DNA of 64,000 nucleotides, taken from contig NC_134469.1 in NCBI RefSeq assembly GCF_964194025.1, forward strand, positions 6,510,001 through 6,574,000. Direction: 5' to 3'. Positions 1-64,000 of the stretch are shown piece by piece; position 1 is the first letter of the stretch, and every line of letters begins with the position of its first letter. The translations under genes were made by a program, and so were the position numbers. The DNA is from Convolutriloba macropyga (lineage: Eukaryota). The notes under the pieces were generated by a model. That model had not been told where the DNA came from and searched no databases. It worked only from the letters and a program-made list of their open reading frames with translations.

Positions 1-261
1 TTCTCCTGCCTATACCTACCTACCTTTAGAGGTCAATTGTCATACCATGGAGTTGGTTTGCGTCGCAAATAGGGGTATAAACAGGCTAGTTAGCTATAAT
101 AAGCTGTAAACAATAAGGTGCATATAATTTGCAAACTAGCGCAAATTCTGGTTCTTTTGCCCGCGCAGAAAAAAAATGGCAGAGAAAAATGCGAAAGCAG
201 AGAAAAAAACGCACGCAAAGAAAAATATCATCATAGAGTATGTCCCTACCATCATTGTCAA

Positions 262-332
262 GCATCGGTGGTACAGTGGTAAAATTATCTCCTCCCACGT
301 GATAACCCATGGTTCGATTCCTAGCCGCTGCA
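262..332 (+). pseudogene. Degenerate tRNA-Gly copy with CCC anticodon (duplicate at 974-1044)
   Basis: Loop CTCCCAC; mismatches in the D, anticodon, T and acceptor stems. Confidence 0.8.
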
Positions 333-629
333 ACTTAGTATCTGCGCAGCAAAATTTTTTTCCCGCCCATACCTACCTACCTTTAGAGACCAATTGTGAT
401 AGCATGGAGTTGATTTGGGTCGCAAATGAGGGTATAAGCAGGCTAGCAAGCGGTAAACAAAAAGGAGCACATAAATTGCAAGAGACTAGCAGTATTATCG
501 GAAAATAGCAGAAAAAATGCTCACGCAGAGAAAAATACCCGCACGCAGACAAAAACGCTCATGCAGAGGAAAATGCGCACGGAGAGAAAAATATATGATA
601 ATAGAGTATCTCCCAACCAGTACTTTCAA

Positions 630-687
630 GCATCGGTGGCAGAGTGGTAGAATTTTCGTCACCCGGGTTCAATTCCCGGTCGATGCA
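630..687 (+). pseudogene. tRNA-Gly pseudogene lacking the anticodon loop (58 nt)
   Basis: ...AATTTTCGTC|ACCCGGGTTC...: 13 nt missing relative to consensus. Confidence 0.85.
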
Positions 688-1672
688 ACTTATTATCTGC
701 GCATCAAAAATTTTCTCCTGCCTATACCTACCTACCTTTAGAGGTCAATTGTCATACCATGGAGTTGGTTTGCGTCGCAAATAGGGGTATAAACAGGCTA
801 GTTAGCTATAATAAGCTGTAAACAATAAGGTGCATATAATTTGCAAACCAGCGCAAATTCTGGTTCTTTTGCCCGCGCAGAAAAAAATTGGCAGAGAAAA
901 ATGCGACAGCAGAGAAAAAAACGCACGCAAAGAAAAATATCATCATAGAGTATGTCCCTACCATCATTGTCAAGCATCGGTGGTACAGTGGTAAAATTAT
1001 CTCCTCCCACGTGATAACCCATGGTTCGATTCCTAGCCGCTGCAACTTAGTATCTGCGCAGCAAAATTTTTTTCCCGCCCATACCTACCTACCTTTAGAG
1101 ACCAATTGTGATAGCATGGAGTTGATTTGGGTCGCAAATGAGGGTATAAGCAGGCTAGCAAGCGGTAAACAAAAAGGAGCACATAAATTGCAAGAGACTA
1201 GCAGTATTATCGGAAAATAGCAGAAAAAAATGCTCACGCAGAGAAAAATACCCGCACGCAGACAAAAACGCTCATGCAGAGGAAAATGCGCACGGAGAAA
1301 AAAATATATGATAATAGAGTCTCTCCCAACCAGTACTTTCAAGCATCGGTGGCAGAGTGGTAGAAATTTTGTCTGCCAAACGAAAGACCCGGGTTCGCGT
1401 CCCAGCCGATGCAACTTATCTGCGCATCAGAACTTTTTTCCCGCCCAAAACTACCTTCACAGACCAATTGTCAAAGCATGGCAATTGGGCGTATAAGCAG
1501 GCTAGAAAGCTATATCAAGCGGTAAACAATAGGGTGCATATAATTTGCTAACCAGTGCAAATTCTGATTCTTTTGCCCGCGCAGAATAAAATGACAAGAA
1601 AATTCGCACGCCAAAAAGCGTACGCAGAGAAAAATATATCAATATAGAGTATGTCCATCCCAGAACTTTCAA

Positions 1673-1743
1673 ACATCGGTGGTTCAGTGGCAGAAGTGCC
1701 GCCTGACAGGAGATAGACCCGGGTACGATTCCCGGCCGATGCA
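1673..1743 (+). pseudogene. Degenerate tRNA-Gly-derived copy with GAC anticodon (related copies near 2.6, 3.27, 4.29, 5.14 kb)
   Basis: ACATCGG...GCCGC CTGACAG GAGAT; broken anticodon stem, B box GGTACGATTCC. Confidence 0.8.
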
Positions 1744-2029
1744 ACATATTATCTGCGCATCAAGATTTTTCTCCCACCATACCTAACTTCAGAGACCAAC
1801 TGTCATAGCATGGCAAATGGGCGAATAAGCAGGCTAGTATGCTATATCAAGCAGTAAACAATAAGATACATATAATTTGCAAACCAGCGCAAATTCTGGT
1901 TCTGTTGCCCGCGCAGAAGAAAATGACAGAGAAAAATTTTCACGCAGAGAAAAGTGCGCACACAGAGGAAAAATGCGCACGCAGAGAAACATATATGATT
2001 ATAGAGTATGTCCCTACCAGTATTGTCAA

Positions 2030-2100
2030 GCATCGGTGGTTCAGAGGTAAAATTTTCGCCTGTAACGCGATAAACTCGGGTTCGATTTTCGGCCGATGTA
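2030..2100 (+). pseudogene. Degenerate tRNA-Gly-derived copy with GTA anticodon (duplicate at 3623)
   Basis: Loop CTGTAAC; several stem substitutions; 3' end CCGATGTA. Confidence 0.8.
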
Positions 2101-4862
2101 GCTTATTATATGCGCACGAAAAAAGCGCATATTATTATCAGAGAATAGCACAGAAAGATGCGCACGCAGAGAAAAATAAGCGCACGCAGACAAAGACGCG
2201 CACGCAGAGGAAAATGCGCACGCAGAGAAAAATATATGATTATAGAGTATGTCCCAACCAGTACCTTCAAGCATCGGTGGCAGAGTGGTAGAATTTTCGC
2301 CTGCCACGCGATAGACCCGGGTTCGATTCGCGGCCGATGCAACGTATTATCTGCGCATAAGAACTTTTTCCCGTCCAAAACTACCTTTAGAGACCAATAG
2401 TCATAGCATGGCAAACGGGCGTATAAGCAGGCTAGTAAGCTAAATCAAGCGGTAAACAATAAGGTGCGTATAATTTGCAGACCAGCGCAAATTCTGATTC
2501 TTTTGCCCGCGCAGAAGAAAATGACAGAGAAAAGTTCGCACGCCAAAAAGCGCAAGCAGAGAAAAATATATCAATATAGAGTATGTCCATCCCAGAACTT
2601 TCAAACATCGGTGGTTCAGTGGCAGAAGTGCCGCCTGACAGGAGATAGACCCGGGTACGATTCCCAGGCGAGGTAACTTATTATCTGCACACCATAAATG
2701 CGCATTTTATTATCAGAGAGTAGCAGAGAAAAATGCGCATGCAGAGAAAAACGCGCACGCAGACAAAACCTCGCACGCAGAGGAAAAAGCGCACGCAGAG
2801 AAAAATATATGATCATAGAGTATGTCCCAACCATTACTTTCAAGCATAGGTGGCAGAGTGGTAGAATTTTCGCCTGCCACGCGATAGACTCGGGTTCGAG
2901 TCCCGTCCGATGCAACTTATTATCTGCACACGAAAAAGGCGCAAATTATTATCAGAGAATAGCAGAGAAAAACGCGCACGCAGACAAAAACGCGCACGCA
3001 GAGGAAAATGCGCACGCAGAAAAATGTATGATTATTGAGTATGTCCCTTACAAAAATTTCAAGCATTGGTGGTTCGGTGGTAGAATTGTCGCCTGCAAAG
3101 CGATAGACTTGGTATCGATTCCCCGCCGATGGCACTTATTACCTGCGCACGAAAAATGCGCAAATTATTATCAGAGAAAAGCAGAGAAAAACGCACATAA
3201 ATAGGAAAATGCGCACGCAAAAAAAAATATATGATTATAGAGTATGTCCATACCAGAACTTTCAAACATCGGTGGTTCAGTGGCAGAAGTGCCGCCTGAC
3301 AGGAGATAGACCCGGGTACGATTCCCGGCCGATGCAACATATTATCTGCGAATCAAGATTTTTCTCCCACCATACCTAACTTCAGAGACCAACTGTCATA
3401 GCATGGCAAATGGGCGAATAAGCAGGCTAGTATGCTATATCAAGCAGGAAACAATAAGATGCATATAATTTGCAAACCAGCGCAAATTCTGGTTCTGTTG
3501 CCCGCGCAGAAGAAAATGACAGAGAAAAATTTTCACGCAGAGAAAAGTGCGCACACAGAGGAAAAATGCGCACGCAGAGAAAAATATATGATTATAGAGT
3601 ATGTCCCTACCAGTATTGTCAAGCATCGGTGGTTCAGAGGTAAAATTTTCGCCTGTAACGCGATAAACTCGGGTTCGATTTTCGGCCGATGTAGCTTATT
3701 ATATGCGCACGAAAAAAGCGCATATTATTATCAGAGAATAGCACAGAAAGATGCGCACGCAGAGAAAAATAAGCGCACGCAGACAAAGACGCGCACGCAG
3801 ATGAAAATGCGCACCCAGAGAAAAATGAACTATTGAAGAGTATGTCCATACCAGTATTGTCAAGCATCGGTGGTTTAGTGGTAGAATTGTCGCCTGCCGC
3901 GCGATAGACCCGGGTTCGATTCACGGCGATGGAACTTATTTATGCGCACGAAAAAAGAGCATATTATTATCAGAGAATAGCAGAGAAAAACGCGCACGCA
4001 GACAAAACCACGCACGCAGAGGAAAATGCGCACGCAGAGAAAAATATATGATTATAGAGGAGGTCCCTACCAGTACTTTCAAGCATTGGTGGTTCAGTGG
4101 TAGAATTGTCGCCTGCAAAGCGATAGACTTGGCAGTGATTCCCCGCCGATGGCACTTATTACCTGCGCACGAAAAATGCGCAAATTTTTATCAGAGAATA
4201 GCAGAGAAAAACGCGCATAAATAGGAATATGCTCACGCAGAGAAAAATATATGATTATAGAGTATGTCCATACCAGAACTTTCAAACATCGGTGGTTCAG
4301 TGGCAGAAGTGCCGCCTGACAGGAGATAGACCCGGGTACGATTCCCGGGCGATGCAACATATTATCTGCGCATCAAGATTTTTCTCCCACCATACCTAAC
4401 TTCAGAGACCAACTGTCATAGCATGGCAAATGGGCGAATAAGCAGGCTAGTATGCTATATCAAGCAGGAAACAATAAGATGCATATAATTTGCAAACCAG
4501 CGCAAATTCTGGTTCTGTTGCCCGCGCAGAAGAAAATGACAGAGAAAAATTTTCACGCAGAGAAAAGTGCGCACAGAGGAAAAATGCGCACGCAGAGAAA
4601 AATATATGATTATAGAGTATGTCCCTACCAGTATTGTCAAGCATCGGTGGTTCAGAGGTAAAATTTTCGCCTATAACGCGTAAACTCGGGTTCGATTTTC
4701 GGCCGATGTAGCTTATTATATGCGCACGAAAAAAGCGCATTTTATTATCAGAGAATAGCAGAGAAAGATGCACACGCAGAGAAAAATAAGCGCACGCAGA
4801 CAAAGACGCGCACGCAGAGAAAAATATATGATTATAGAGTATGTCAAAACCAGTACTTTCAA

Positions 4863-4920
4863 GCATCGGTGGCAGAGTGGTAGAATTTTCGCCACCCGGG
4901 TTCGATTCGCGGCCGATGCA
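4863..4920 (+). pseudogene. tRNA-Gly pseudogene lacking the anticodon loop (58 nt)
   Basis: TTCGCC|ACCCGGG, the same 13-nt deletion as at 630. Confidence 0.85.
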
Positions 4921-7742
4921 ACATATTATCTGCGCATCAGAACTTTTTCCCGTCCAAAACTACCTTTAGAGACCAATAGTCATAGCATGGCAAACGGGCG
5001 TATAAGCAGGCTAGTAAGCTAAATCAAGCGGTAAACAATATGGTGCATATAATTTGCAGACCAGCGCAAATTCTGATTCTTTTGCCCGCGCAAATAGAAA
5101 AATATATCAATATAGAGTATGTCCATCCCAGAACTTTCAAACATCGGTGGTTCAGTGGCAGAAGTGCCGCCTGACAGGAGATAGACCCGGGTACGATTCC
5201 CGGCCGATGCAACTCTTTATCTGCGCATCAAGATTTTTTCCCCACCATACCTAACTTCAGAGACCAACTGTCATAGCATGGCAAATGGTCGAATAAGCAG
5301 GCTAGTAAGCTATATCAAGCAGTAAACAATAAGATGCATATAATTTGCAAACCAGCACAAATTCTGGTTCTGCTGCCCGCGCAGAAGAAAATGAGAGAGA
5401 AAAATTTTCACGCAGAGAAAAATGCGCACACAGAGGAAAAATGCGCACGCAGAGACAAATATATGATTATAGAGTATGTCCCTACCAAAATTTTCAAACC
5501 TCCGTGGTTGAGTGATAGAATTGCCGCCTGCCACGCGATAGACTCGGGTTCGAGTCCCGTCCGATGCAACTTATTATCTGCGCACGAAAAATGCGCAAAT
5601 TATTATCAGAGAATAGCAGAGAAAAACGCGCACGAAGACAAAAACGCGCACACAGAGGAAAATGCGCACGCAGAAAAATGTATGATTTTTGAGTATGTCC
5701 CTACCAAAAATTTCAAGCATTGGTGGTTCAGTGGTAAAATTGTCGCCTGCAAAGCGATAGACTTGGTATCGATTCCCCGCCGATGGCACTTATTACCTGC
5801 GCACGAAATGCGCAAATTATTATCAGAGAATATCAGAGAAAAGCGCGCATAAATAGGAAAATGCGCAAGCAGAGAAAAATATATGATTATAGAGTATGTC
5901 CATACCAGTATTGTCAAGCATCGGTGGTTCAGTGGTAGAATTGTCGACTGCCACGCGATAGACCCGGGTTCGATTCACGGCGATGCAACTTATTTATGCG
6001 CACTAAAAAAGAGCATATTATTATCAGAGAATAGCAGAGAAAAACGCGCACGCAGACAAAACCACGCGCGCAGAGGAAAATGCGCACGCAGAGAAAAATA
6101 TATGATTATAGAGTATGTCCATACCAGTATTCTCAAGCATCGGTGGTTCAGTGGTAAAATTTTCGCCTGCCACGCAATAGACCCGGGTTCGATTCCGGGC
6201 CGCGCACGAAGAAAGCGCATATTATTATCAGAGAACAGCAGAGAAAAACGCGGACGCAGACAAAACCACGCACGCAGAGGAAAATGCGCACGCAGAGAAA
6301 AATATATGATTATAGAGGAGGTCCCCACCAGTACTTTCAAGCATCGGAGGTTCAGTGGTAGAATTGTCGCCTGCCACGCGCTACACCCGGTTTTGATAGA
6401 CCCGGCCGATTCAACTTATTATCTGCGCATCAAAGCTTTTCTCTCGCCCATACCTACCTTTAGAGACCAATTGTCATGGCATGGCAAATGGGCGTATAAG
6501 CAGGATAGTAAGCTATACCAGGCGGTAAACAATAAGGTACATATAATTTGCAAACCAGCGCAAATTCTGATTCTTTTGCCCGCGCAGAAGAAAATGACAG
6601 AGACAAATTCGCGCGCAAAAAAGCGCACCCAAAGAAAATGATATCAATATAGAGTATTTCCATAAAAGAATTTTCAAACATCGGTGGTTAAGTGGTAGAA
6701 TTGCCTCCTGCAACGCGATAGACTCGGGTTCGATTCCGGGCCGATGCAATTTAATATCTGCGCACGAAAAATTCGCAAATTATTATCAGAGAATAGCAGA
6801 GAAAAACGCGCACGCAGACAAAAACTCGCACGCAGAGCAAAATGCGCACGCAGAGAAAAATATGATTATAGAGTATGTCCCTACGATTATTGTCAAGCAT
6901 CGGTGGTTCAGTGGTAGAATTGTCGCCTGCTACGCGATACACCCGTGTTCGATTCCCGCACGATGTAACTTAATATCTGCGCACGAAAAATGCGCAAATT
7001 ATTATCAGAGAATAGCAGAGAAAAACGCGCACGCAGAGGAAAATGCGCACGCAGAGAAAAATACATGATTGTAGAGTATGTCCCTACGAGTATTGTCAGG
7101 CATCGGTGGTTCAGTCGTAGAATTGTCGCCTGCCACGCGATAGACTCGGGTTCGATTCCAGGCCGATGCAACTTGTTATCTGCGCACGAAAAATGCGCAA
7201 ATTATTATCAGAATAGCAGGAAAAAACGCGCACGCAGTCGAAAACGCGCACGCAGAGAAAAAAGCGCACGCAGACAAAAATATATGATCATAGAGTGTGT
7301 CCCTACGAATATTGTCAAGCATCGGTGGTTCAGTGGGAGAATTGTCCCCTGAAAAGCGATAGACCCGTGTTCGATTTCCGGCCGATGGAACTTAAAATCT
7401 GAGCACGAAAAATGCGGAAATTATTATCAGAGAATAGCAGAGAAAAACGCGCATGCAGACAAAAACACGCACGCAGGGGAAACTGCGCAAGCAGAGAAAA
7501 ATATGTCCCTGCGAGTATTGTCAAGCATCGGTGATTCAGTGGTAGAATTGTCGCCTGCCAAGCGATAGACCCGGGTTCGATACCCCCGATGAAACTTATT
7601 ATCTGAGCACGAAAAATGCGCAAATTATTATCAGAGAATAGCAGAGAAAAATACGCACGCAGGCAACAACGCGCACGCAGAGGAAAATGCGCACGCAGAA
7701 AAAACGTATGATTATTGAGTATGTCCCTACCAGTAATTTCAA

Positions 7743-7813
7743 GCATTGGTGGTTCAGTGGTAGCATTGTTGCCTACCACGCGATAGACTCGGGTTCGATT
7801 CCCCGCCAATGCA
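7743..7813 (+). pseudogene. tRNA-Gly(ACC)-like copy (representative of 7 copies)
   Basis: Loop CTACCAC; acceptor GCATTGG/CCAATGC fully paired; D- and T-stem mismatches. Confidence 0.8.
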
Positions 7814-9043
7814 ACCTATTATCTGCGCACCAAAAAATGCGCATATTATTACCAGAGAATAAGAGAGAAAAACGCGCACGCAGACAACCACGCACGCAGA
7901 GCAAAATGCGCACGCAGAGAAAAATATATGATTACAGAGGAGGTCCCTACCAGTACTTACAAGCATCGGTGGTTCAGTCGTAGAATTGTCGCCTGCCACG
8001 CGATAGACTCGGGTTCGATGCCAGGCCGATGCAACTTGTTATCTGCGCACAAAAAATGCGCAAATTATTATCAGAATAGCAGAAAAAAACGCGCACGCAG
8101 ACGAAAACCCGCACGCAGAGGAAAAAGCGCACGCAGACAAAAACATAAGATTATAGAGTATGTCCCTACGATTATTGTCAAGCATCGGTGGTTCAGTGGT
8201 AGAATTGTCGCCTGAAAAGCGATAGACCCGTGTTCGATTCCCAGCCGATGGAACTTAAAATCTGAGCACGAAAAATGCGGAAATTATTATCAGAGAATAG
8301 CAGAGAAAAACGCGCATGCAGACAAAAACACGCACGCAGGGGAAACTGCGCAAGCAGAGAAAAATATGTCCCTGCGAGTATTGTGAAGCATCGGTGATTC
8401 AGTGGTAGAATTGTCGCCTGCCAAGCGATAGACCCGGGTTCGATACCCCCGATGAAACTTATTATCTGCGCACGAAAAATGCGCAAATTATTATCAGAGA
8501 ATAGCAGAGAAAAATACGCACGCAGGCAACAACGCGCACGCAGAGGAAAATGCGCACGCAGAAAAAACGTATGATTATTGAGTATGTCCCTACCAGTAAT
8601 TTCAAGCATTGGTGGTTCAGTGGTAGCATTGTTGCCTACCACGCGATAGACTCGGGTTCGATTCCCCGCCAATGCAACCTATTATCTGCGCACCAAAAAA
8701 TGCGCATAATATTACCAGAGAATAAGAGAGAAAAACGCGCACGCAGACAACCACGCACGCAGAGCAAAATGCGCACGCAGAGAAAAATATATGATTACAG
8801 AGGAGGTCCCTACCAGTACTTACAAGCATCGGTGGTTCAGTCGTAGAATTGTCGCCTGCCACGCGATAGACTCGGGTTCGATGCCAGGCCGATGCAACTT
8901 GTTATCTGCGCACAAAAAATGCGCAAATTATTATCAGAATAGCAGAAAAAACGCGCACGCATACGAAAACGCTCACGCAGAGGAAAAAGCGCACGCAGAC
9001 AAAAACATAAGATTATAGAGTATGTCCCTACGATTATTGTCAA

Positions 9044-9114
9044 GCATCGGTGGTTCAGTGGTAGAATTGTCGCCTGAAAAGCGATAGACCCGTGTTCGAT
9101 TCCCGGCCGATGGA
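9044..9114 (+). pseudogene. tRNA-Gly-derived copy with GAA anticodon (representative of 6 copies)
   Basis: GTCGC CTGAAAA GCGAT; G1:G72 mismatch (CCGATGGA) and a T-stem mismatch (CCGTG). Confidence 0.8.
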
Positions 9115-22313: not shown

Positions 22314-22384
22314 GCATCGGTGGTTCAGTGGTAGAATTGTCGCCTGCCACGCGATAGACCCGGGTTCGATTCCCGGCCGATGCA
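22314..22384 (+). tRNA. tRNA-Gly(GCC), array-consensus copy
   Basis: Cloverleaf: GCATCGG/CCGATGC, GTTC/GAAT, GTCGC/GCGAT with loop CTGCCAC, CCGGG/CCCGG with loop TTCGATT, discriminator A. Confidence 0.8.
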
Positions 22385-23215: not shown

Positions 23216-23251
23216 TATGATTATAGAGTAGGTCCCTACCACGTTTGTCAA

Positions 23252-23761: not shown

Positions 23762-23892
23762 ACTTATTATCTGCGCACGATAAATGCGCAAATTATTATC
23801 AGAGAAAAGCAGAGAAAAACGCGCACAAAGAAGAAAATGCGCACGCAGAGAAAATATATGATTATAGAGTATGTCCCTACGATTTTTCTCAA

Positions 23893-48952: not shown

Positions 48953-49023
48953 GCATCAGTGGTTCAGAGGTAGAATTGTCGCCTGCCACGCGATAGACCC
49001 GGGTTCGATTCCCGGCTGATGCA
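48953..49023 (+). tRNA. tRNA-Gly(GCC) variant with compensated acceptor stem and downstream terminator
   Basis: GCATCAG/CTGATGC fully paired, other stems intact, TTTT at 49047-49050. Confidence 0.7.
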
Positions 49024-52229: not shown

Positions 52230-55200
52230 CAGAGAAAAAAATATGATTGTAGAGTAGGTCCCTAACAGTTTTGTCAAGCATCGTTGGTTCACTGGTAGGG
52301 TTGTCGCCTGCCAAGCGATAGACACGGTTTCCATTCCCGGCCGATGCAACTTATTATCTGCGCACAAAAAATGCGCAAATTATTATCAGAGAATAGCAGA
52401 GAAAAACGCGCACGCAGACAAAAACGCACACGCAGACAAAAACGGGCACGCAGAGAAAAACGCGCACAAAGAGGAAAATGCGCACGCAGAGAAAAGTATA
52501 TGATTATACAGTATGTCCATACGAGTATTGCCAAGCTTCGGTGGTTTAGTGGTAGAATTGTCGCCTGCCACGCGATAGACACGGGTTCGATTCCAGGCTG
52601 ATGCAACTTATTATCCGCGCACAAAAACTGCGCAAAATTATTGTCAAAGAATAGCAGAGAAAAATGCGCACACAGAGGAAAAATGCGCACGACAAATATA
52701 TGATTATAGAGTATGTCCCTTCCAGTATTGCCAAGCATCGGTGGTTCAGTGGTAGAATTTTCGCCTGCCACGCGATAGATCCGGGTTCGATTCCCGCCCG
52801 ATGGAACTTATTATTTGCGCTCAAAAAATGCGCAAATTATTATCAGAGAATAGCAGAGATAAATGCGCACGCAGAGAAAGACGCGCACGCAGACAAAAAC
52901 GCACACGCAGACAAAAACGGGCACGCAGAGAAAAATGCGCACGCAGAGAAAAAAATGTGATTATAGAGTAGGTCCCTAACAGTTTTGTCAAGCATCGTTG
53001 GTTCAGTGTAGAGTTGTCGCCTGCCAAGCGATAGACACGGGTTCGATTCCCGGCCGATGCAACTTATTATCTGCGCACAAAAAATGCGCAAATTATTATC
53101 ACAGAATAGCAGAGAAAAACGCGCACAAAGAGGAAAATGCGCACGCAGAGAAAAGTATATGATTATACAGTATGTCCATACGAGTATTGTCAAGCTTCGG
53201 TGGTTCAGTGGTAGAATTGTCGCCTGCCACGCGATAGAACCGGATTCGATTCCCGGCTGATGCAACTTATTTTCGGCGCACAAAAACTGCGCAAAATTAT
53301 TGTCAAAGAATAGCAGAGAAAAATGCGCACACAGAGGAAAAATGCGCACGAAAAATATATGATTATAGAGTATGTCCCTTCCAGTATTGCCAAGCATCGG
53401 TGGTTCAGTGGTAGAATTTTCGCCTGCCACGCGATAGATCCGGGTTCGATTCCCGGCCGATGGAACTTATTATCTGCGCTCAAAAAATGCGCAAATTATT
53501 ATCAGAGAATAGCAGAGAAAAATGCGCACGCAGACAAAAACGCACACGCAGACAAAAACGGGCACGCCGAGAAAAACGCGCAGGCAGACAAAAACGCACA
53601 AGCAGACAAAAACGGGCACGCAGAGAAATGCGCAAGCAGAGAAAAAATATGATTATAGAGTAGGTCCCTAACGGTTTTGTCAAACATCGTTGGTTCAGTG
53701 GTAGAGTTGTCGCCTGCCAAGCGATAGACACGGGTTCGATTCCCGGCCGATGCAACTTATTATCTGCGCACAAAAAATGCGCAAATTATTATCACAGAAT
53801 AGCAGAGAAAAACGCGCACAAAGAGGAAAATGCGCACGCAGAGAAAAGTATATGATTATACAGTATGTCCATACGAGTATTATCAAGCTTCGGTGGTTCA
53901 GCGGTAGAATTGTCGCCTGCCACGCGATAGACCCGGGTTCGATTTCCGGCTGATGCAACTTATTATTGGCGCACAAAAACTGCGCAAAATTATTGTCAAA
54001 GAATAGCAGAGAAAAATGCGCACACAGAGGAAAAATGCGCACGAAAAATATATGATTATAGAGTATGTCCCTTCCAGTATTGCCAAGCATCGGTGGTTCA
54101 GTGGTAGAATTTTCGCCTGCCACGCGATAGATCCGGGTTCGATTCCCGCCCGATGGAACTTATTATTTGCGCTCAAAAAATGCGCAAATTATTATCAGAG
54201 AATAGCAGAGATAAATGCGCACGCAGAGAAAGACGCGCACGCAGACAAAAACGCACACGCAGACAAAAACGGGCACGCAGAGAAAAATGCGCACGCAGAG
54301 AAAAAAATGTGATTATAGAGTAGGTCCCTAACAGTTTTGTCAAGCATCGTTGGTTCACTGGTAGGGTTGTCGCCTGCCAAGCGATAGACACGGTTTCCAT
54401 TCCCGGCCGATGCAACTTATTATCTGCGCACAAAAAATGCGCAAATTATTATCAGAGAATAGCAAAGAAAAACGCGCACGCAGACAAAAACCCACACGCA
54501 GACAAAAACGGGCACGCAGAGAAAAACGCGCACAAAGAGGAAAATGCGCACGCAGAGAAAAGTATATGATTATACAGTATGTCCATACGAGTATTGCCAA
54601 GCTTCGGTGGTTTAGTGGTAGAATTGTCGCCTGCCACGCGATAGACACGGGTTCGATTCCAGGCTGATGCAACTTATTATCCGCGCACAAAAACTGCGCA
54701 AAATTATTGTCAAAGAATAGCAGAGAAAAATGCGCACACAGAGGAAAAATGCGCACGACAAATATATGATTATAGAGTATGTCCCTTCCAGTATTGCCAA
54801 GCATCGGTGGTTCAGTGGTAGAATTTTCGCCTGCCACGCGATAGATCCGGGTTCGATTCCCGCCCGATGGAACTTATTATTTGCGCTCAAAAAATGCGCA
54901 AATTATTATCAGAGAATAGCAGAGATAAATGCGCACGCAGAGAAAGACGCGCACGCAGACAAAAACGCACACGCAGACAAAAACGGGCACGCAGAGAAAA
55001 ATGCGCACGCAGAGAAAAAAATGTGATTATAGAGTAGGTCCCTAACAGTTTTGTCAAGCATCGTTGGTTCAGTGTAGAGTTGTCGCCTGCCAAGCGATAG
55101 ACACGGGTTCGATTCCCGGCCGATGCAACTTATTATCTGCGCACAAAAAATGCGCAAATTATTATCACAGAATAGCAGAGAAAAACGCGCACAAAGAGGA

Positions 55201-56200
55201 AAATGCGCACGCAGAGAAAAGTATATGATTATACAGTATGTCCATACGAGTATTGTCAAGCTTCGGTGGTTCAGTGGTAGAATTGTCGCCTGCCACGCGA
55301 TAGACCCGGATTCGATTCCCGGCTGATGCAACTTATTTTCGGCGCACAAAAACTGCGCAAAATTATTGTCAAAGAATAGCAGAGAAAAATGCGCACACAG
55401 AGGAAAAATGCGCACGAAAAATATATGATTATAGAGTATGTCCCTTCCAGTATTGCCAAGCATCGGTGGTTCAGTGGTAGAATTTTCGCCTGCCACGCGA
55501 TAGATCCGGGTTCGATTCCCGGCCGATGGAACTTATTATCTGCGCTCAAAAAATGCGCAAATTATTATCAGAGAATAGCAGAGAAAAATGCGCACGCAGA
55601 CAAAAACGCACACGCAGACAAAAACGGGCACGCCGAGAAAAACGCGCAGGCAGACAAAAACGCACAAGCAGACAAAAACGGGCACGCAGAGAAATGCGCA
55701 AGCAGAGAAAAAAATATGATTATAGAGTAGGTCCCTAACGGTTTTGTCAAACATCGTTGGTTCAGTGGTAGAGTTGTCGCCTGCCAAGCGATAGACACGG
55801 GTTCGATTCCCGGCCGATGCAACTTATTATCTGCGCACAAAAAATGCGCAAATTATTATCACAGAATAGCAGAGAAAAACGCGCACAAAGAGGAAAATGC
55901 GCACGCAGAGAAAAGTATATGATTATACAGTATGTCCATACGAGTATTATCAAGCTTCGGTGGTTCAGCGGTAGAATTGTCGCCTGCCACGCGATAGACC
56001 CGGGTTCGATTTCCGGCTGATGCAACTTATTATTGGCGCACAAAAACTGCGCAAAATTATTGTCAAAGAATAGCAGAGAAAAATGCGCACACAGAGGAAA
56101 AATGCGCACGAAAAATATATGATTATAGAGTATGTCCCTTCCAGTATTGCCAAGCATCGGTGGTTCAGTGGTAGAATTGTCGCCTGCCACGCGATAGATC
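52230..56200 (+). repeat. 2066-bp tandem duplication
   Basis: ORFs 52289/54355, 52843/54909, 53695/55762; the shared 1-nt deletion CAGTGTAGAG occurs at ~53005 and ~55071. Confidence 0.9.
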
Positions 56201-56369
56201 CGGGTTCGATTCCCGTCCGATGCAAATTTTTATCTGCGCTTGAAAAATGCGCAAATTATTATCAGAGAATAGCAGAGAAAAACGCGCACGCAGACAAAAA
56301 CGCACACGCAGACAAAAACGGGCACGCAGAGAAAAATGCGCACGCAGAGAAAAAATATGATTGTAGAGT

Positions 56370-56418: not shown

Positions 56419-58599
56419 ACTTATTATCTGCCCACGAAAAATTCGCAAATTATTATCAGAGAAAGGCAGAGAAAAATGCGCACGCAGAGAAAAACGCGCA
56501 CGCAGAGGAAAATGCGCACGCAGAAAAAACGTATGGTTATTGAGTATGTCCCCACCAGTAATTTCAAGCATTGGTGGTTCAGTGGTAGAATTGTCGCCTG
56601 CCACGCGATAGACCCGGGTTCGATTCCCGGCCGATGCAACTGATTATCTGCGCACGAAAAATGCGCAAATTATTATCAGAGAATAGCAGAGAAAAAGGCG
56701 CACAAAGAGGAAAATGCGCACGCAGAGAAAAATATGATTATAGAGTATGTCCATACCAGCATTGTCAAGCTTCGGTTGTTCAGTGGTAGAAGTGTCACCT
56801 GCCACGCGATAGACCCGGGTTCGATTCCCGGCCGAGTAACTGATTATCTGCGCACAAAAAATGCGCAAATTATTATCAGAGAATAGCAGAGAAAAATGCG
56901 CACGCAGAGAAAAAAATATGATTGTAGAGTATGTCCCTATCAGTATTGTCAAGCATCGGTGGTTCAGTGTTAGAATTGTCGCCTGCCATGCGATAGACCC
57001 GAGTTCGATTCCGGCCAACGCAACTTATTATCTGCGCACGAAAAATGCGCAAATTATTATCAGAGAATAGCAGAGAAAAATGAGCACAAAGAGGAAAATG
57101 CGCACGCAGAGAAAAATATGATTATAGAGTATGTCCATACCAGCATTGTCAAGCTTCGGTGGTTCAGTGGTAGAAGTGTCACCTGCCACGCGATAGACCC
57201 GGGTTCGATTCCCGGCCGAGTAACTGATTATCTGCGCACAAAAAATGCGCAAATTATTATCAGAGAATAGCAGAGAAAAATGCGCACAGAGAGAAAAAAA
57301 TATGATTGTAGAGTATGTCCCTATCAGCATTGTCAAGCTTCGGTGGTTAAGTGGTAGAAGTGTCACTTGCCACGCGATAGACCCGGGTTCGATTCCCGGC
57401 CGATGCAACTGATTATCTGCGCACAAAAAATGCGCAAATTATTATCAGAGAATAGCAGAGAAAAATGCGCACAAAGAGGAAAATGCGCACGCAGAGAAAA
57501 ATATGATTATAGAGTATGTCCATACCAGCATTGTCAAGCTTCGGTGGTTCAGTGGTAGAAGTGTCACCTGCCACGCGATAGACCCGGGTTCGATTCCCGG
57601 CCGAGTAACTGATTATCTGCGCACAAAAAATGCGCAAATTATTATCAGAGAATAGCAGAGAAAAATGCGCACAGAGAGAAAAAAATATGATTGTAGAGTA
57701 TGTCCCTATCAGCATTGTCAAGCTTCGGTGGTTAAGTGGTAGAAGTGTCACTTGCCACGCGATAGACCCGGGTTCGATTCCCGGCCGATGCAACTGATTA
57801 TCTGCGCGCAAAAAATGCGCAAATTATTATCAGAGAATAGCAGAGAAAAATGCGCAAGCAGAGAAAAAAATATGATTATAGAGTAGGTCCCTAACAGTTT
57901 TGTCAAGCATCGTTGGTTCAGTGGTAGAGTTGTCGCCTGCCAAGCGATAGACACGGGTTCGATTACCGGCCGATGCAACTTATTATCTGCGCACAAAAAA
58001 TGCGCAAATTATTATCACAGAATAGCAGAGAAAAACGCGCACAAAGAGGAAAATGCGCACGCAGAGAAAAGTATATGATTATACAGTATGTCCATACGAG
58101 TATTATCAAGCTTCGGTGGTTAAGTGGTAGAAGTGTCACTTGCCACGCGATAGACCCGGGTTCGATTCCCGGCTGATGCAACTTATTATCGGCGCACAAA
58201 AACAGCGCAAAATTATTGTCAAAGAATAGCAGAGAAAAATGCGCACACAGAGGAAAAATGCGCACGAAAAATATATGATTATAGAGTATGTCCCTTCCAG
58301 TATTGCCAAGCATCGGTGGTTCAGTGGTAGAATTGTCGCCTGCCACGCGATAGATCCGGGTTCGATTCCCGGCCGATGCAACTGATTATCTGCGCACGAA
58401 AAATGCGCAAATTATTATCAGAGAAAGGCAGAGAAAAATGCGCACGCAGAGAAAAACGCGCACGCAGAGGAAAATGCGCACGCAGAAAAAACGTATGGTT
58501 ATTGAGTATGTCCCCACCAGTAATTTCAAGCATTGGTGGTTCAGTGGTAGAATTGTCGCCTGCCACGCGATAGACCCGGGTTCGATCCACGGCCGATGC

Positions 58600-60130
58600 A
58601 ACTGATTATCTGCGCACGAAAAATGCGCAAATTATTATCAGAGAATAGCAGAGAAAAAGGCGCACAAAGAGGAAAATGCGCACGCAGAGAAAAATATGAT
58701 TATAGAGTATGTCCATACCAGCATTGTCAAGCTTCGGTGGTTCAGTGGTAGAAGTGTCACCTGCCACGCGATAGACCCGGGTTCGATTCCCGGCCGAGTA
58801 ACTGATTATCTGCGCACAAAAAATGCGCAAATTATTATCAGAGAATAGCAGAGAAAAATGCGCACGCAGAGAAAAAAATATGATTGTAGAGTATGTCCCT
58901 ATCAGTATTGTCAAGCATCGGTGGTTCAGTGTTAGAATTGTCGCCTGCCATGCGATAGACCCGAGTTCGATTCCGGCCAACGCAACTTATTATCTGCGCA
59001 CGAAAAATGCGCAAATTATTATAAGAGAATAGCAGAGAAAAATGCGCACAAAGAGGAAAATGCGCACGCAGAGAAAAATATGATTATAGAGTATGTCCAT
59101 ACCAGCATTGTCAAGCTTCGGTGGTTCAGTGGTAGAAGTGTCACCTGCCACGCGATAGACCCGGGTTCGATTCCCGGCCGAGTAACTGATTATCTGCGCA
59201 CAAAAAATGCGCAAATTATTATCAGAGAATAGCAGAGAAAAATGCGCACGCAGAGAAAAAAATATGATTGTAGAGTATGTCCCTATCAGTATTGTCAAGC
59301 ATCGGTGGTTCAGTGTTAGAATTGTCGCCTGCCATGCGATAGACCCGAGTTCGATTCCGGCCAACGCAACTTATTATCTGCGCACGAAAAATGCGCAAAT
59401 TATTATCAGAGAATAGCAGAGAAAAATGCGCACAAAGAGGAAAATGCGCACGCAGAGAAAAATATGATTATAGAGTATGTCCATACCAGCATTGTCAAGC
59501 TTCGGTGGTTCAGTGGTAGAAGTGTCACCTGCCACGCGATAGACCCGGGTTCGATTCCCGGCCGAGTAACTGATTATCTGCGCACAAAAAATGCGCAAAT
59601 TATTATCAGAGAATAGCAGAGAAAAATGCGCACAGAGAGAAAAAAATATGATTGTAGAGTATGTCCCTATCAGCATTGTCAAGCTTCGGTGGTTAAGTGT
59701 TAGAATTGTCGCCTGTCATGCGATAGACCCGAGTTCGATTCCGGCCAACGCAACTTATTATCTGCGCACGAAAAATGCGCAAATTATTATCAGAGAATAG
59801 CAGAGAAAAATGCGCACAAAGAGGAAAATGCGCACGCAGAGAAAAATATGATTATAGAGTATGTCCATACCAGCATTGTCAAGCTTCGGTGGTTCAGTGG
59901 TAGAAGTGTCACCTGCCACGCGATAGACCCGGGTTCGATTCCCGGCCGAGTAACTGATTATCTGCGCACAAAAAATGCGCAAATTATTATCAGAGAATAG
60001 CAGAGAAAAATGCGCACAGAGAGAAAAAAATATGATTTTAGAGTATGTCCCTATCAGCATTGTCAAGCTTCGGTGGTTAAGTGGTAGAAGTGTCACTTGA
60101 CACGCGATAGACCCGGGTTCGATTCCCGGC
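58600..60130 (+). repeat. 384-bp dimeric higher-order repeat (related 385-bp run at ~56.7-57.8 kb)
   Basis: ORFs at 58606, 58990, 59374, 59758. GCTTCGG...CCGAGTA and GTGTTAGA...CCAACGCA tRNA variants alternate. Confidence 0.88.
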
Positions 60131-60654
60131 CGATGCAACTGATTATCTGCGCACAAAAAATGCGCAAATTATTATCAGAGAATAGCAGAGAAAAATGCGC
60201 AAGCAGAGAAAAAAATATGATTATAGAGTAGGTCCCTAACAGTTTTGTCAAGCATCGTTGGTTCAGTGGTAGAGTTGTCGCCTGCCAAGCGATAGACACG
60301 GGTTCGATTACCGGCCGATGCAACTTATTATCTGCGCACAAAAAATGCGCAAATTATTATCACAGAATAGCAGAGAAAAACGCGCACAAAGAGGAAAATG
60401 CGCACGCAGAGAAAAGTATATGATTATACAGTATGTCCATACGATTATTATCAAGCTTCGGTGGTTAAGTGGTAGAAGTGTCACTTGCCACGCGATAGAC
60501 CCGGGTTCGATTCCCGGCTGATGCAACTTATTATCGGCGCACAAAAACAGCGCAAAATTATTGCCAAAGAATAGCAGAGAAAAATGCGCACACAGAGGAA
60601 AAATGCGCACGAAAAATATATGATTATAGAGTATGTCCCTTCCAGTATTGCCAA

Positions 60655-60725
60655 GCATCGGTGGTTCAGTGGTAGAATTGTCGCCTGCCACGCGATAGAT
60701 CCGGGTTCGATTCCCGGCCGATGCA
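60655..60725 (+). tRNA. tRNA-Gly(GCC) (variable loop AGAT) followed by T5
   Basis: One change from consensus; TTTTT at 60728-60732. Confidence 0.72.
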
Positions 60726-62743
60726 AATTTTTATCTGCGCTCGAAAAATGCGCAAATTATTATCAGAGAATAGCAGAGAAAAACGCGCACGCAGACAAAA
60801 ACGCACACGCAGACAAAAACGGGCACGCAGAGAAAAATGCGCACGCAGAGAAAAAAATATGATTGTAGAGTATGTCCCTACCAGTATTGTCAAGCATCGG
60901 TGGTTCAGTGTTAGAATTGTCGCCTGCCACGCGATAGACCCGAGTTCGATTCCCGGCCGATACAACTTATTATCTGCGCACGAAAAATGCGCAAATTGTT
61001 ATCAGAGAAAGGCAGAGAAAAATGCGCACGCAGAGAAAAACGCGCACGCAGAGGAAAATGCGCACGCAGAAAAAACGTATGGTTATTGAGTATGTCCCCA
61101 CCAGTAATTTCAAGCATTGGTGGTTCAGTGTTAGAATTGTCGCCTGCCATGCGATAGACCCGAGTTCGATTCCAGCCAACGCAACTTATTATCTGCGCAC
61201 GAAAAATGCGCAAATTATTATCAGAGAATAGCAGAGAAAAATGCGCACAAAGAGGAAAATGCGCACGCAGAGAAAAATATGATTATAGAGTATGTCCATA
61301 CCAGCATTGTCAAGCTTCGGTGGTTCAGTGGTAGAAGTGTCACCTGCCACGCGATAGACCCGGGTTCGATTCCCGGCCGAGTAACTGATTATCTGCGCAC
61401 AAAAAATGCGCAAATTATTATCAGAGAATAGCAGAGAAAAATGCGCACAGAGAGAAAAAAAATATGATTTTAGAGTATGTCCCTATCAGCATTGTCAAGC
61501 TTCGGTGGTTAAGTGGTAGAAGTGTCACTTGCCACGCGATAGACCCGGGTTCGATTCCCGGCCGATGCAATTGATTATCTGCGCACAAAAAATGCGCAAA
61601 TTATTATCAGAGAATAGCAGAGAAAAATGCGCAAGCAGAGAAAAAAATATGATTATAGAGTAGGTCCCTAACAGTTTTGTCAAGCATCGTTGGTTCAGTG
61701 GTAGAGTTGTCGCCTGCCAAGCGATAGACACGGGTTCGATTACCGGCCGATGCAACTTATTATCTGCGCACAAAAAATGCGCAAATTGTTATCACAGAAT
61801 AGCAGAGAAAAACGCGCACAAAGAGGAAAATGCGCACGCAGAGAAAAGTATATGATTATACAGTATGTCCATACGAGTATTATCAAGCTTCGGTGGTTAA
61901 GTGGTAGAAGTGTCACTTGCCACGCGATAGACCCGGGTTCGATTCGCGGCTGATGCAACTTATTATCGGCGCACAAAAACAGAGCAAAATTATTGTCAAA
62001 GAATAGCAGAGAAAAATGCGCACACAGAGGAAAAATGCGCACGAAAAATATATGATTATAGAGTATGTCCCTTCCAGTATTGCCAAGCATCGGTGGTTCA
62101 GTGGTAGAATTGTCGCCTGCCACGCGATAGATCCAGTTTCGATTCCCGGCCGATGCAAATTTTTATCTGCGCTCGAAAAATGCGCAAATTATTATCAGAG
62201 AATAGCAGAGAAAAACGCGCACGCAGACAAAAACGCACACGCAGACAAAAACGGGCACGCAGAGAAAAATGCGCACGCAGAGAAAAAAATATGATTGTAG
62301 AGTATGTCCCTACCAGTATTGTCAAGCATCGGTGGTTCAGTGTTAGAATTGTCGCCTGCCACGCGATAGACCCGAGTTCGATTCCCGGCCGATACAACTT
62401 ATTATCTGCGCACGAAAAATGCGCAAATTATTATCAGAGAAAGGCAGAGAAAAATGCGCACGCAGAGAAAAACGCGCACGCAGAGGAAAATGCGCACGCA
62501 GAAAAAACGTATGGTTATTGAGTATGTCCCCACCAGTAATTTCAAGCATTGGTGGTTCAGTGTTAGAATTGTCGCCTGCCATGCGATAGACCCCAGTTCG
62601 ATTCCGGCCAACGCAACTTATTATCTGCGCACGAAAAATGCGCAAATTATTATCAGAGAATAGCAGAGAAAAATGCGCACAAAGAGGAAAAATGCGCACG
62701 AAAAATATATGATTATAGAGTATGTCCCTTCCAGTATTGCCAA

Positions 62744-62814
62744 GCATCGGTGGTTCAGTGGTAGAATTGTCGCCTGCCACGCGATAGATCCGGGTTCGAT
62801 TCCCGGCCGATGCA
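62744..62814 (+). tRNA. tRNA-Gly(GCC) (variable loop AGAT) followed by T5
   Basis: Same variant as 60655; TTTTT at 62817-62821. Confidence 0.72.
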
Positions 62815-64000
62815 AATTTTTATCTGCGCTCGAAAAATGCGCAAATTATTATCAGAGAACAGCAGAGAAAAACGCGCACGCAGACAAAAACGCACACGCA
62901 GACAAAAACGGGCACGCAGAGAAAATGCGCACGCAGAGAAAAAAATATGATTGTAGAGTATGTCCCTACCAGTATTGTCAAGCATCGGTGGTTCAGTGTT
63001 AGAATTGTCGCCTGCCACGCGATAGACCCGAGTTCGATTCCCGGCCGATACAACTTATTATCTGCGCACGAAAAATGCGCAAATTATTATCAGAGAAAGG
63101 CAGAGAAAAATGCGCACACAGAGAAAAACGCGCACGCAGAGGAAAATGCGCACGCAGAAAAAACGTATGGTTATTGAGTATGTCCCTACCAGTATTGTCA
63201 AGCATCGGTGGTTCAGTGTTAGAATTGTCGCCTGCCACGCGATAGACCCGAGTTCGATTCCCGGCCGATACAACTTATTATCTGCGCACGAAAAATGCGC
63301 AAATTATTATCAGAGAAAGGCAGAGAAAAATGCGCACGCAGAGAAAAACGCGCACGCAGAGGAAAATGCGCACGCAGAAAAAACGTATGGTTATTGAGTA
63401 TGTCCCCACCAGTAATTTCAAGCATTGGTGGTTCAGTGGTAGAATTGTCGCCTGCCACGCGATAGACCCGGTTTCGATTCCCGGCCGATGCAACTGATTA
63501 TCTGCGCACGAAAAATGCGCAAATTATTATCAGAGAATAGCAGAGAAAAATGCGCACAAAGAGGAAAATGCGCACGCAGAGAAAAATATGATTATAGAGT
63601 ATGTCCATACCAGCATTGTCAAGCTTCGGTGGTTCAGTGGTAGAAGTGTCACCTGCCACGCGATAGACCCGGGTTCGATTCCCGGCCGATGCAACTGATT
63701 ATCTGCGCACAAAAAATGCGCAAATTATTATCAGAGAATAGCAGAGAAAAATGCGCACGCAGAGAAAAAAAATATGATTGTAGAGTATGTCCTTATCAGT
63801 ATTGTCAAGCAACGGTGGTTCAGTGTTAGAATTATCGCCTGCCATGCGATAGACCCGAGTTCGATTCCGGCCAACGCAACTTATTATCTGCGCACGAAAA
63901 ATGCGCAAATTATTATCAGAGAATAGCAGAGAAAAATGCTCACAGAGAGGAAAATGCGCAAGCAGAGAAAAATATATGATTATACAGTATGTCCATACCA

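What the first reader, a model, noticed from the sequence alone, without database searches (positions are those of the whole stretch)
1..64000. A >64-kb satellite whose monomer is a complete, foldable tRNA-Gly gene
Seen: roughly 280-300 same-orientation units (estimate). Each has a full 71-nt tRNA-Gly body, and many keep perfect A/B boxes and cloverleaf. Known: tRNA-derived SINEs and satellites usually lose the cloverleaf. Tandem tRNA arrays with short repeats in the spacers have precedent in Entamoeba, and tRNA clusters occur in several animals. Inference: this lies between a gene family and satellite DNA. It could be a Gly-tRNA dosage amplifier (relevant to Gly-rich products such as silk, collagen or cuticle), a dense TFIIIC/condensin platform, or a centromeric/subtelomeric repeat.
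Basis: partly seen in the sequence, partly recalled or inferred. Interest (0 to 1): 0.85.

Follow-up and report, generated by a model that had tools for sequence, protein, structure and literature searches.

The report
Satellite DNA built from a glycine tRNA gene
The whole 64-kb window is one unbroken head-to-tail array of 282 copies of a glycine tRNA gene plus a short spacer, but most copies are broken and mutate almost as fast as the spacer, so it is mainly a tRNA-derived satellite, a kind of repeat already known in other animals.

Summary
The window contains 282 same-strand tRNA-Gly(GCC)-derived units with nothing inserted between them, and the array runs off both ends. Units are 185-257 bp, or about 335-357 bp in 24 long units. 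Unit length steps by an 18-bp spacer subrepeat.

The consensus body is a genuine tRNA. An identical 71-nt gene sits alone, with a T5 terminator, beside a Nup93 gene on an unrelated public eukaryotic contig.

The array behaves like satellite DNA:
- Adjacent units are about 86% identical, while higher-order-repeat partners are 93-100% identical.
- Only 44 of 282 units (16%) keep an intact Gly-GCC cloverleaf, and 92 units are exact copies of already defective bodies.
- 59 units have mutated anticodons.
- Only 38 units have TTTT within 40 nt downstream; the dominant short unit lacks the terminator segment.
- Mutation events per site are 7.2 in the body against 7.9 in the flanks. Stems, B box and anticodon evolve at the flank rate, with no compensatory changes.
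- A weak deficit remains: 0.81 after matching for base composition, mostly in the A box and loops, and 0.57 in the youngest domain (22-41 kb).

Verdict: a mostly decaying tRNA-derived satellite, a new member of a known kind. A minority of live copies is not excluded.

The parts
1..64000 (+). Uninterrupted head-to-tail array of 282 tRNA-Gly(GCC)-derived units. tRNA bodies make up 31% of the bases. The array continues beyond both window ends.
22314..22384 (+). Example of an intact consensus tRNA-Gly(GCC) body: 71 nt, 67.9 bits against Rfam tRNA, all 21 stem pairs present.
22314..22516 (+). Example short unit of 203 bp. It consists of the tRNA, a 3' trailer with no T4 run, 18-bp subrepeats, then a TATA-like block and a CAA just before the next tRNA.
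22276..22290 (+). TATA-like block at -38 to -24 relative to the tRNA at 22314. It recurs in the unit consensus.
   Evidence: sequence reading; function inferred
48953..49285 (+). Example long unit of 333 bp with an intact tRNA. It carries an extra segment of about 130-150 bp that starts with a T4 run about 23 nt after the tRNA. That segment matches no Rfam family and has no significant fold (z = -1.1).
23095..23213 (+). Example run of the 18-bp spacer subrepeat (6.6 copies). The number of copies per spacer ranges from 0 to 6 and sets the unit length (185, 203, 221, 239 or 257 bp). There are about 675 copies in the window.
1..6896 (+). Oldest-looking domain: 25 units, none intact, a mean of 4.4 broken pairs, and 17 with non-GCC anticodons. 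It is rich in long units that keep the T4 run.
7100..12274 (+). An 863-bp, four-unit higher-order repeat present 6 times. The four units are GCC with 1 broken pair, GAA, GCC with an indel, and ACC. All four are defective and copies are 97-100% identical.
22075..41270 (+). Youngest and most intact domain: 88 units, 36 of them intact. It is built of 442-bp dimers (239+203) and larger higher-order repeats, and holds 14 of the 19 GCA-anticodon units. Only 3 units have T4 within 40 nt. Body mutation events are 0.57 of the base-matched expectation.
52535..56352 (+). A 2066-bp, nine-unit higher-order repeat whose two copies are 99.9% identical.
56769..60066 (+). A 384-bp dimer higher-order repeat (184+200 bp) made of defective units, each with 3-4 broken pairs and a 1-nt indel. 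A longer repeat of about 2345 bp is overlaid on it.

Best explanation
This is a satellite DNA derived from a genuine nuclear tRNA-Gly(GCC) gene.

Proposed history (inferred from the sequence):
- One gene, with its upstream TATA-like flank and a downstream segment holding the T-run terminator, was duplicated in tandem. This gave the long unit of about 335-357 bp.
- A derivative lacking about 130-150 bp, including the terminator, became the dominant short unit.
- Slippage of an 18-bp spacer subrepeat produced the length classes of 185 to 257 bp.
- The array then grew and turned over by unequal crossing-over or segmental duplication of multi-unit blocks (higher-order repeats), regardless of whether the tRNA in a unit still worked.

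Shown here:
- Most units are now pseudogenes that accumulate substitutions at nearly the spacer rate.
- The youngest block (22-41 kb) still holds most of the 44 intact copies.

Inferred: the intact copies are there because the block is young, with ectopic conversion between units possibly helping. Translation probably does not depend on them.

Roughly half the units keep consensus A and B boxes, so Pol III and TFIIIC could bind if the chromatin allows. No strong selection maintains that ability.
For: Array structure:
- 282 same-strand units with no interruption.
- Adjacent units are 86% identical while higher-order-repeat partners are 93-100% identical. Repeat periods include 863, 1295, 2066, 384 and 442 bp.

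Decay of the tRNA bodies:
- 44 of 282 are intact and 20 equal the consensus.
- 59 have non-GCC anticodons: GCA 19, GAC 10, ACC 10, GAA 6 and others, including two units where the anticodon is deleted.
- 53 carry indels.

Amplification after inactivation:
- 92 units are exact duplicates of already defective bodies.
- Whole higher-order repeats consist only of defective units.

Rate tests:
- Fitch events per site are 7.21 in the body and 7.92 in the flanks (p=0.83).
- Nearest-neighbour divergence is 0.0266 in the body and 0.0320 in the flanks.
- Singleton variants per site are 0.52 in the body and 0.43 in the flanks.
- Observed over expected, matched for base: stems 0.92, B box 0.89, anticodon 1.01.
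- Stem pairing is no better than in column shuffles: 0.890 against 0.888, with 13 compensated double changes against 9.9 expected.

Terminators:
- TTTT lies within 40 nt downstream in 23 of 24 long units but in only 15 of 257 short units.
- From an intact unit, the median distance to the next TTTT is about 1.2 kb.
- Single-copy genes with the same or nearly the same body carry T5 at +3 and at +1. One of them lies beside a Nup93/Nic96 gene.
Against: - After matching for base composition the body has 19% fewer events than the flanks (P=0.003). The deficit is concentrated in non-stem positions (0.62), the A box (0.59) and universally invariant tRNA sites (0.54).
- In the 22-41 kb domain the body is at 0.57 of expectation (p=0.027).
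- This could reflect weak selection on a subset of copies or on the internal promoter. It could also come from ectopic conversion, which favours the most homogeneous segment, or from sequence-context effects on mutation.
- Lack of a T4 run does not prevent production of tRNA, because read-through transcripts could be processed by RNase P and RNase Z.
- Expression, chromatin state and chromosomal position were not testable.
Confidence: 0.75

Rival explanations
1. Live tRNA-Gly gene cluster acting as a dosage amplifier. The intact copies, mainly at 22-41 kb, would be transcribed by Pol III. Because terminators are missing, transcription might run through several units, with RNase P and RNase Z cutting out the tRNAs. 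These copies would add materially to the tRNA-Gly(GCC) pool. The decayed domains would be older, dead margins.
For: - 44 intact copies share a body identical to a bona fide single-copy gene elsewhere.
- The unit consensus has a TATA-like block at about -30 and a conserved CAA at -3 to -1.
- Body events in the central domain are 0.57 of expectation.
- Changes are fewer than expected in the A box and at invariant sites.
Against: - Even in the central domain only 36 of 88 units are intact. 14 units there carry GCA anticodons in otherwise good bodies, and these would be useless or harmful if expressed.
- Stems and anticodon evolve at the flank rate and there is no compensatory change.
- Only 3 of 88 units in that domain have T4 within 40 nt.
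- Defective units are amplified as readily as intact ones.
Confidence: 0.15
2. Structural chromosomal element. The array would serve as a TFIIIC, condensin or cohesin loading platform, a chromatin boundary, or a centromeric or subtelomeric repeat. In this reading tRNA function does not matter but protein binding does.
For: - Unit length is close to one nucleosome repeat.
- The higher-order-repeat architecture resembles that of centromeric satellites.
- 140 of 282 units keep consensus A and B boxes.
- The A box has fewer changes than expected, 0.59.
- Entamoeba provides a precedent for tRNA arrays with short repeats in the spacers (PMC2652664).
Against: - The B box, the high-affinity TFIIIC site, changes at the flank rate (0.89, P=0.29). 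Only 154 of 282 units fit GGTTCGANTCC.
- No positional information is available, because the window lies entirely inside the array.
Confidence: 0.07
3. Satellite derived from a SINE. The unit would be a tRNA-headed SINE, or part of one, that became tandemly repeated, as described for Squam SINEs in reptiles.
For: - The unit begins with a tRNA-related head carrying A and B boxes.
- An anonymous segment and a tail of simple repeats follow it.
- Earlier notes on this genome report many tRNA-like Pol III units inside mobile elements (unchecked).
Against: - The head is a complete 71-nt tRNA, including the 3' acceptor strand and discriminator base. It is 100% identical to a single-copy gene elsewhere.
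- The long, apparently ancestral unit has a T4 terminator about 23 nt after the tRNA. That would truncate a SINE transcript before its body.
- No LINE-like tail was recognised, and the spacer of the long units matches no Rfam family.
Confidence: 0.03

Closest known systems
Amphibian tandem repeat families with a tRNA-like sequence: newt PolIII/TAN (about 360 nt), Rana/polIII (about 250 nt), Xenopus OAX / satellite I, and Hydromantes Hy/polIII (about 200 nt), as summarised in PMC10702118
   Same: - Head-to-tail arrays of units a few hundred bp long, each containing a tRNA-related Pol III promoter segment.
- The unit sizes (200-360 nt) match those found here.
- PolIII/TAN is capable of transcription in vitro, according to the paper.
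   Different: - In those families the tRNA part is only tRNA-like. Rana/polIII shows 64% similarity over 64 nt, and Hy/polIII lacks a B box.
- Here the consensus monomer is a complete tRNA, 100% identical to a functional-looking single-copy gene, and 16% of the copies are still intact.
- The host here is an invertebrate, called a probable acoel in earlier notes that I did not check.
Large tRNA-gene (tDNA) clusters of animals, for example Nematostella (more than 17,000 tDNAs, 89% clustered) and zebrafish (about 20,000, 65% clustered), from PMC2888827
   Same: - Very many tRNA genes and pseudogenes packed less than 1 kb apart.
- Adjacent copies mostly lie in parallel orientation.
- Turnover is rapid and specific to each lineage.
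   Different: - The paper reports mostly heterogeneous pairs (different amino acids) in Nematostella and zebrafish.
- This array comes from a single isoacceptor. It has a regular short period, spacer subrepeats and a clear higher-order-repeat structure.
Entamoeba tRNA gene arrays (PMC2652664)
   Same: - Tandem array units containing tRNA genes.
- Complex short tandem repeats lie between the genes.
- The arrays make up a sizeable part of the DNA.
   Different: - In Entamoeba the arrays hold almost all the tRNA genes of the genome, with up to 5 different tRNAs per unit and sometimes 5S RNA, so they must be functional.
- Here there is one tRNA type, 84% of copies are defective, and the same tRNA occurs as an ordinary single gene in other eukaryotic DNA.
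Arabidopsis chromosome 1 pre-tRNA array of 27 three-gene units, 81 genes in all (PMC2886086)
   Same: A high-copy tRNA gene array expanded by local duplication.
   Different: - The Arabidopsis array is much smaller.
- It has three genes per unit.
- I know this paper only from its abstract, which says nothing about pseudogenes or about loss of terminators.

Membership tests
Satellite DNA with higher-order repeats | Long head-to-tail array of a short non-coding monomer | tested here: met
   282 units of 172-369 bp fill 64 kb without interruption, all on one strand. The ORFs in the array are artefacts of the repeats and carry no Pfam domain.
Satellite DNA with higher-order repeats | Neighbouring monomers are diverged, while multi-monomer blocks are nearly identical | tested here: met
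   Adjacent units are 85.7% identical and higher-order-repeat partners are 93-100% identical. Repeat periods are 384, 442, 863, 1295 and 2066 bp.
Satellite DNA with higher-order repeats | Monomer sequence not held by selection for a gene product | tested here: met
   - Body to flank event ratio is 0.91, or 0.81 when matched for base composition.
- Stems, anticodon and B box evolve at the flank rate.
- There is no compensatory signal.
- 92 units are copies of defective bodies.
- A weak residual deficit remains in loops and the A box, so the feature is largely but not absolutely met.
Satellite DNA with higher-order repeats | Heterochromatic, centromeric or telomeric location | not testable with these tools
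   The window lies wholly inside the array. No assembly context or chromatin data are available.
Functional tandem tRNA gene cluster | Most copies fold into a canonical cloverleaf with the correct anticodon | tested here: not met
   44 of 282 units are intact Gly-GCC, 227 of 282 have at least one broken pair, 59 have other anticodons or none, and 53 carry indels.
Functional tandem tRNA gene cluster | Pol III terminator (T4 or longer) shortly after each gene | tested here: not met
   TTTT lies within 40 nt in 38 of 282 units, and in 4 of the 44 intact ones. Single-copy genes with the same or nearly the same body have T5 at +1 and +3.
Functional tandem tRNA gene cluster | Purifying selection on the tRNA body relative to the spacer | tested here: inconclusive
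   Overall observed over expected is 0.81 (P=0.003), and 0.57 in the 22-41 kb domain (p=0.027). Stems are at 0.92, the anticodon at 1.01, and there is no covariation.
Functional tandem tRNA gene cluster | Transcription and mature tRNA output | not testable with these tools
   No RNA or ChIP data are available.
tRNA-derived SINE or SINE-derived satellite | tRNA-related head with A and B boxes, followed by a body, a LINE-derived 3' region and a tail that are all transcribed together | tested here: not met
   The head is a complete tRNA. Long units have a T4 run about 23 nt after it, which would stop Pol III before the rest of the unit. No LINE-like region was recognised.
tRNA-derived SINE or SINE-derived satellite | Dispersed copies flanked by target-site duplications | not testable with these tools
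   Only this window of the genome can be read. Scans with a 43-nt piece of the tRNA body found two single tRNA genes in the metagenome collection and nothing in the viral collection. This probe detects the tRNA body only, not the spacer.
Entamoeba-type tRNA arrays | Short tandem repeats in the spacers between arrayed tRNA genes | tested here: met
   The 18-bp subrepeat occurs 0-6 times per spacer, about 675 copies in all.
Entamoeba-type tRNA arrays | The arrays are the genome's main source of functional tRNA genes | not tested
The high fraction of pseudogenes argues against it.

The most novel reading that the evidence does not exclude
The 19-kb central domain (22-41 kb) would be a live Pol III unit without terminators. 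Polymerase starting at any of the units that keep A and B boxes would run on for about a kilobase or more through several units. It would make polycistronic tRNA-spacer transcripts that are cut into tRNA-Gly and A-rich spacer RNAs. The satellite would then be both a tRNA-Gly source and a dense Pol III/TFIIIC domain, kept partly intact by weak selection or by conversion.
Probability: 0.15. Interest if true: 0.6.

Novelty: new member of a known kind. Interest (0 to 1): 0.32.

Why it matters
The array captures the passage from gene to satellite in a single locus. One end of the window holds old, decayed long units that still carry the terminator. The middle holds a young block lacking the terminator segment, in which 41% of copies are still perfect tRNAs.

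The practical lesson concerns annotation. tRNA finders report about 260 tRNA genes here, including apparent Cys, Val, Phe, Ser, Tyr and Asp tRNAs. Most are pseudogenes built on a Gly scaffold. Counting them would distort estimates of tRNA gene number, isoacceptor supply and codon adaptation for this genome.

If part of the array proved to be transcribed, it would be a natural test case for Pol III read-through and for the effect of dense TFIIIC sites on chromatin.

Tried and rejected
- A fuzzy-regex scan for units timed out. I replaced it with nhmmer.
- I scanned the long-unit region (window 1-2300, which contains the extra ~130-150-bp segment) against Rfam in E-value mode, looking for a second small-RNA gene such as a spliced-leader RNA, 5S or snRNA. 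Only tRNA hits and sub-threshold noise appeared. Folding one whole long unit gave z = -1.1, which is not significant.
- I looked for protein-coding potential. Fifty-five ORFs of 120 aa or more exist, but they repeat with the higher-order-repeat period. Three were tested and had no Pfam family above cut-off.
- I checked for CpG decay as a sign of methylation-driven erosion. CpG observed over expected is 1.37, so there is no depletion. CpG columns vary only about 1.3 times more than other columns.
- I tested whether T4 runs are specifically avoided on the sense strand. The count of 165 is close to my own composition-based estimate of about 134, so I reject special avoidance.
- I tested whether the two public contigs that carry the same tRNA share flanks with the array, which would point to a source locus. 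Only the tRNA body matches. A resemblance between the upstream region of L001 and the 18-mer is therefore best treated as chance.
- A scan of viral contigs with the 43-nt piece of the tRNA body found nothing.
- Literature searches for the same array in acoel genome papers found nothing relevant. The identity of the organism remains unverified.

Full report
**Observation**

The window has no N bases and is one continuous tandem array.
- ARAGORN tRNAs, all on the + strand.
- Rfam's tRNA model gives 264 hits at or above its gathering score.
- nhmmer with the array consensus finds 282 + strand units and only one chance-level minus-strand hit.
- Spacing between unit starts ranges from 172 to 369 bp, so nothing is inserted. 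The array runs off both ends of the window.
- tRNA bodies make up 31% of the bases.

**Anatomy of the unit**

The dominant short unit has five parts: the 71-nt tRNA body, a 3' trailer with no T4 run, a variable number of 18-bp subrepeats, a TATA-like block at about -38 to -24, and a conserved CAA at -3 to -1.
- The number of subrepeats per spacer is 0-6 and explains the length classes of 185, 203, 221, 239 and 257 bp.
- Twenty-four long units of 321-369 bp carry an extra segment of about 130-150 bp directly after the trailer. It begins with a T4 run about 23 nt after the tRNA.
- The long-unit region (window 1-2300) gave no Rfam match other than tRNA, and a whole long unit has no significant fold.
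- Long units dominate the most decayed part of the window, at 1-7 kb. The simplest reading, which is an inference, is that the long unit is ancestral and the short unit is a deletion derivative that lost the terminator.

**The consensus is a real tRNA**

The consensus body (for example window:22314-22384) scores 67.9 bits. I scanned public metagenome contigs with a 43-nt piece of the tRNA body and found two single genes.
- L001 carries a 71/71 identical tRNA-Gly(GCC) followed by T5 at +3.
- L002 carries a copy with two differences, which form one compensated acceptor pair, followed by T5 at +1.
- L001 also encodes a Nup93/Nic96 protein (E = 6.5e-102), so it is eukaryotic.
- Neither contig shares any flanking sequence with the array.

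The array therefore derives from an ordinary isodecoder, and genuine genes of this type have a terminator right after the gene.

**State of the copies**

| Property | Units (of 282) |
|---|---|
| Body equal to the consensus | 20 |
| All 21 stem pairs present | 55 |
| Fully intact Gly-GCC (no broken pair, no indel, invariant sites correct) | 44 |
| Carry indels | 53 |
| Anticodon other than GCC (GCA 19, GAC 10, ACC 10, GAA 6, TCC 3, others; two deleted) | 59 |
| Both boxes fit the general A- and B-box consensus | 140 |
| TTTT within 40 nt downstream | 38 |

- TTTT within 40 nt is present in 23 of 24 long units but only 15 of 257 short ones, and in 4 of the 44 intact units.
- From an intact unit the next TTTT lies a median of about 1.2 kb away.

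**Satellite dynamics**

Adjacent units are 85.7% identical, while units one higher-order-repeat period apart are 93-100% identical. The clear domains are these:
- 1-6.9 kb: old, none intact, a mean of 4.4 broken pairs.
- 7.1-12.3 kb: an 863-bp four-unit repeat present 6 times, made only of defective units.
- 22-41.3 kb: the youngest domain, with 36 of 88 units intact, built of 442-bp dimers and larger repeats.
- 52.5-56.4 kb: a 2066-bp repeat whose copies are 99.9% identical.
- 56.8-60 kb: a 384-bp dimer repeat of defective units.

Ninety-two units are exact copies of already defective bodies. Amplification therefore proceeds regardless of whether the tRNA is intact.

I aligned positions -70 to +50 around all units and built a tree from the alignment. 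Fitch parsimony on that tree gave these results:
- Body 7.21 events per site, flanks 7.92 (Mann-Whitney p=0.83).
- Nearest-neighbour pairs differ at 0.0266 in the body and 0.0320 in the flanks. Singleton variants per site are 0.52 in the body and 0.43 in the flanks.

G and C sites mutate faster here and the body is GC-rich, so I matched each body site to flank sites with the same base:

| Region | Observed / expected | P |
|---|---|---|
| Whole body | 0.81 | 0.003 |
| Stems | 0.92 | 0.21 |
| B box | 0.89 | 0.29 |
| Anticodon | 1.01 | not significant |
| Non-stem positions | 0.62 | 0.0003 |
| A box | 0.59 | 0.006 |
| Invariant tRNA sites | 0.54 | 0.002 |

- Stem pairing (0.890) equals the column-shuffle expectation (0.888). 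There are 13 compensated double changes against 9.9 expected, and 352 changes that break a pair.
- By domain, the body-to-flank ratio ranges from 0.57 at 22-41 kb (p=0.027) to 1.20 at 52-64 kb.

A working tRNA gene family would protect stems and anticodon above all, and this one does not. The small residual deficit has three possible sources:
- weak constraint on a minority of copies or on the A box;
- conversion that favours the most homogeneous segment;
- sequence-context effects on mutation.

**Interpretation**

The best explanation (about 0.75) is a tRNA-Gly-derived satellite that expands and turns over by unequal exchange of multi-unit blocks. Most copies are pseudogenes. The young central block still looks gene-like mainly because it is young.

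The rivals are:
- a partly live tRNA-Gly cluster, possibly transcribed as read-through polycistrons (0.15);
- a structural TFIIIC or centromere-type element (0.07), for which the unprotected B box is a negative indication;
- a SINE-derived satellite (0.03), which is contradicted by the complete tRNA and by the terminator right after it in long units.

Transcription, chromatin state and chromosomal position could not be tested.

**Comparison with what is known**

- Tandem repeat families containing a tRNA-like sequence have been described in amphibians: newt PolIII/TAN (about 360 nt), Rana/polIII (about 250 nt), Xenopus OAX / satellite I, and Hy/polIII (about 200 nt) (PMC10702118).
- Very large, fast-evolving tRNA-gene clusters are documented in Nematostella and zebrafish (PMC2888827).
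- Entamoeba has tRNA arrays with short tandem repeats in the spacers (PMC2652664).
- What is particular here is the completeness of the tRNA in the consensus monomer, the clean higher-order-repeat structure, and the takeover by a derivative without a terminator.
- It is a new member of a known kind.

**Context from earlier notes of this scan (not checked by me)**

- The genome is from a marine animal, called a probable acoel (s1-234590).
- It also holds a 47-kb amplified snoRNA gene cluster (s1-210990) and another array of tRNA-like units (s1-225542). Tandem amplification of small-RNA genes may therefore be a habit of this genome.
- Notes on my own window point out the distinct isodecoder (s1-214680), the GCA subfamily (s1-214722) and the 'anticodon library' (s1-214681).
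- My tests show that the isodecoder is an ordinary one found elsewhere. They also show that anticodon changes occur at the neutral rate (observed over expected 1.01).

Noticed in passing
window 22774-41050 (for example 23691-23761 and 32586-32656): 19 units in the window carry a GCA (Cys) anticodon, 14 of them in this stretch, in a Gly body that is otherwise intact or nearly so. They spread as part of the higher-order repeats. Across the array the anticodon changes at the flank rate (observed over expected 1.01), so this looks like neutral drift followed by amplification. It does not look like a selected new tRNA.
   Followed up: partly
window -20 to -4 upstream of each tRNA (for example 22294-22310): The stretch just upstream of the tRNA start is the most variable part of the unit, at 9.35 events per site against 7.2 in the body and 3.0 for the CAA at -3 to -1. 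Raised variation next to tRNA genes has been linked to transcription-associated mutagenesis (from my own knowledge, not checked in a paper here). I did not test whether that applies here.
   Followed up: no
L001:1626-1696 (minus strand) with L001:178-1407: A public eukaryotic contig carries a single tRNA-Gly(GCC) gene identical to the array consensus. It has a TATA-like element at about -30 and T5 at +3, and lies next to, or within an intron of, a Nup93/Nic96 gene.
   Followed up: partly
whole window: There is strong strand asymmetry: A 33.5% against T 21.4%, and 2361 AAAA against 165 TTTT on the tRNA-sense strand. The cause is the A-rich 18-bp subrepeat, which also contains the palindromic hexamer TGCGCA. 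I did not test whether the subrepeat is a protein-binding site.
   Followed up: no
whole window: CpG observed over expected is 1.37 and GpC is 1.59, so there is no CpG depletion. This suggests little or no long-term cytosine methylation of the array.
   Followed up: partly
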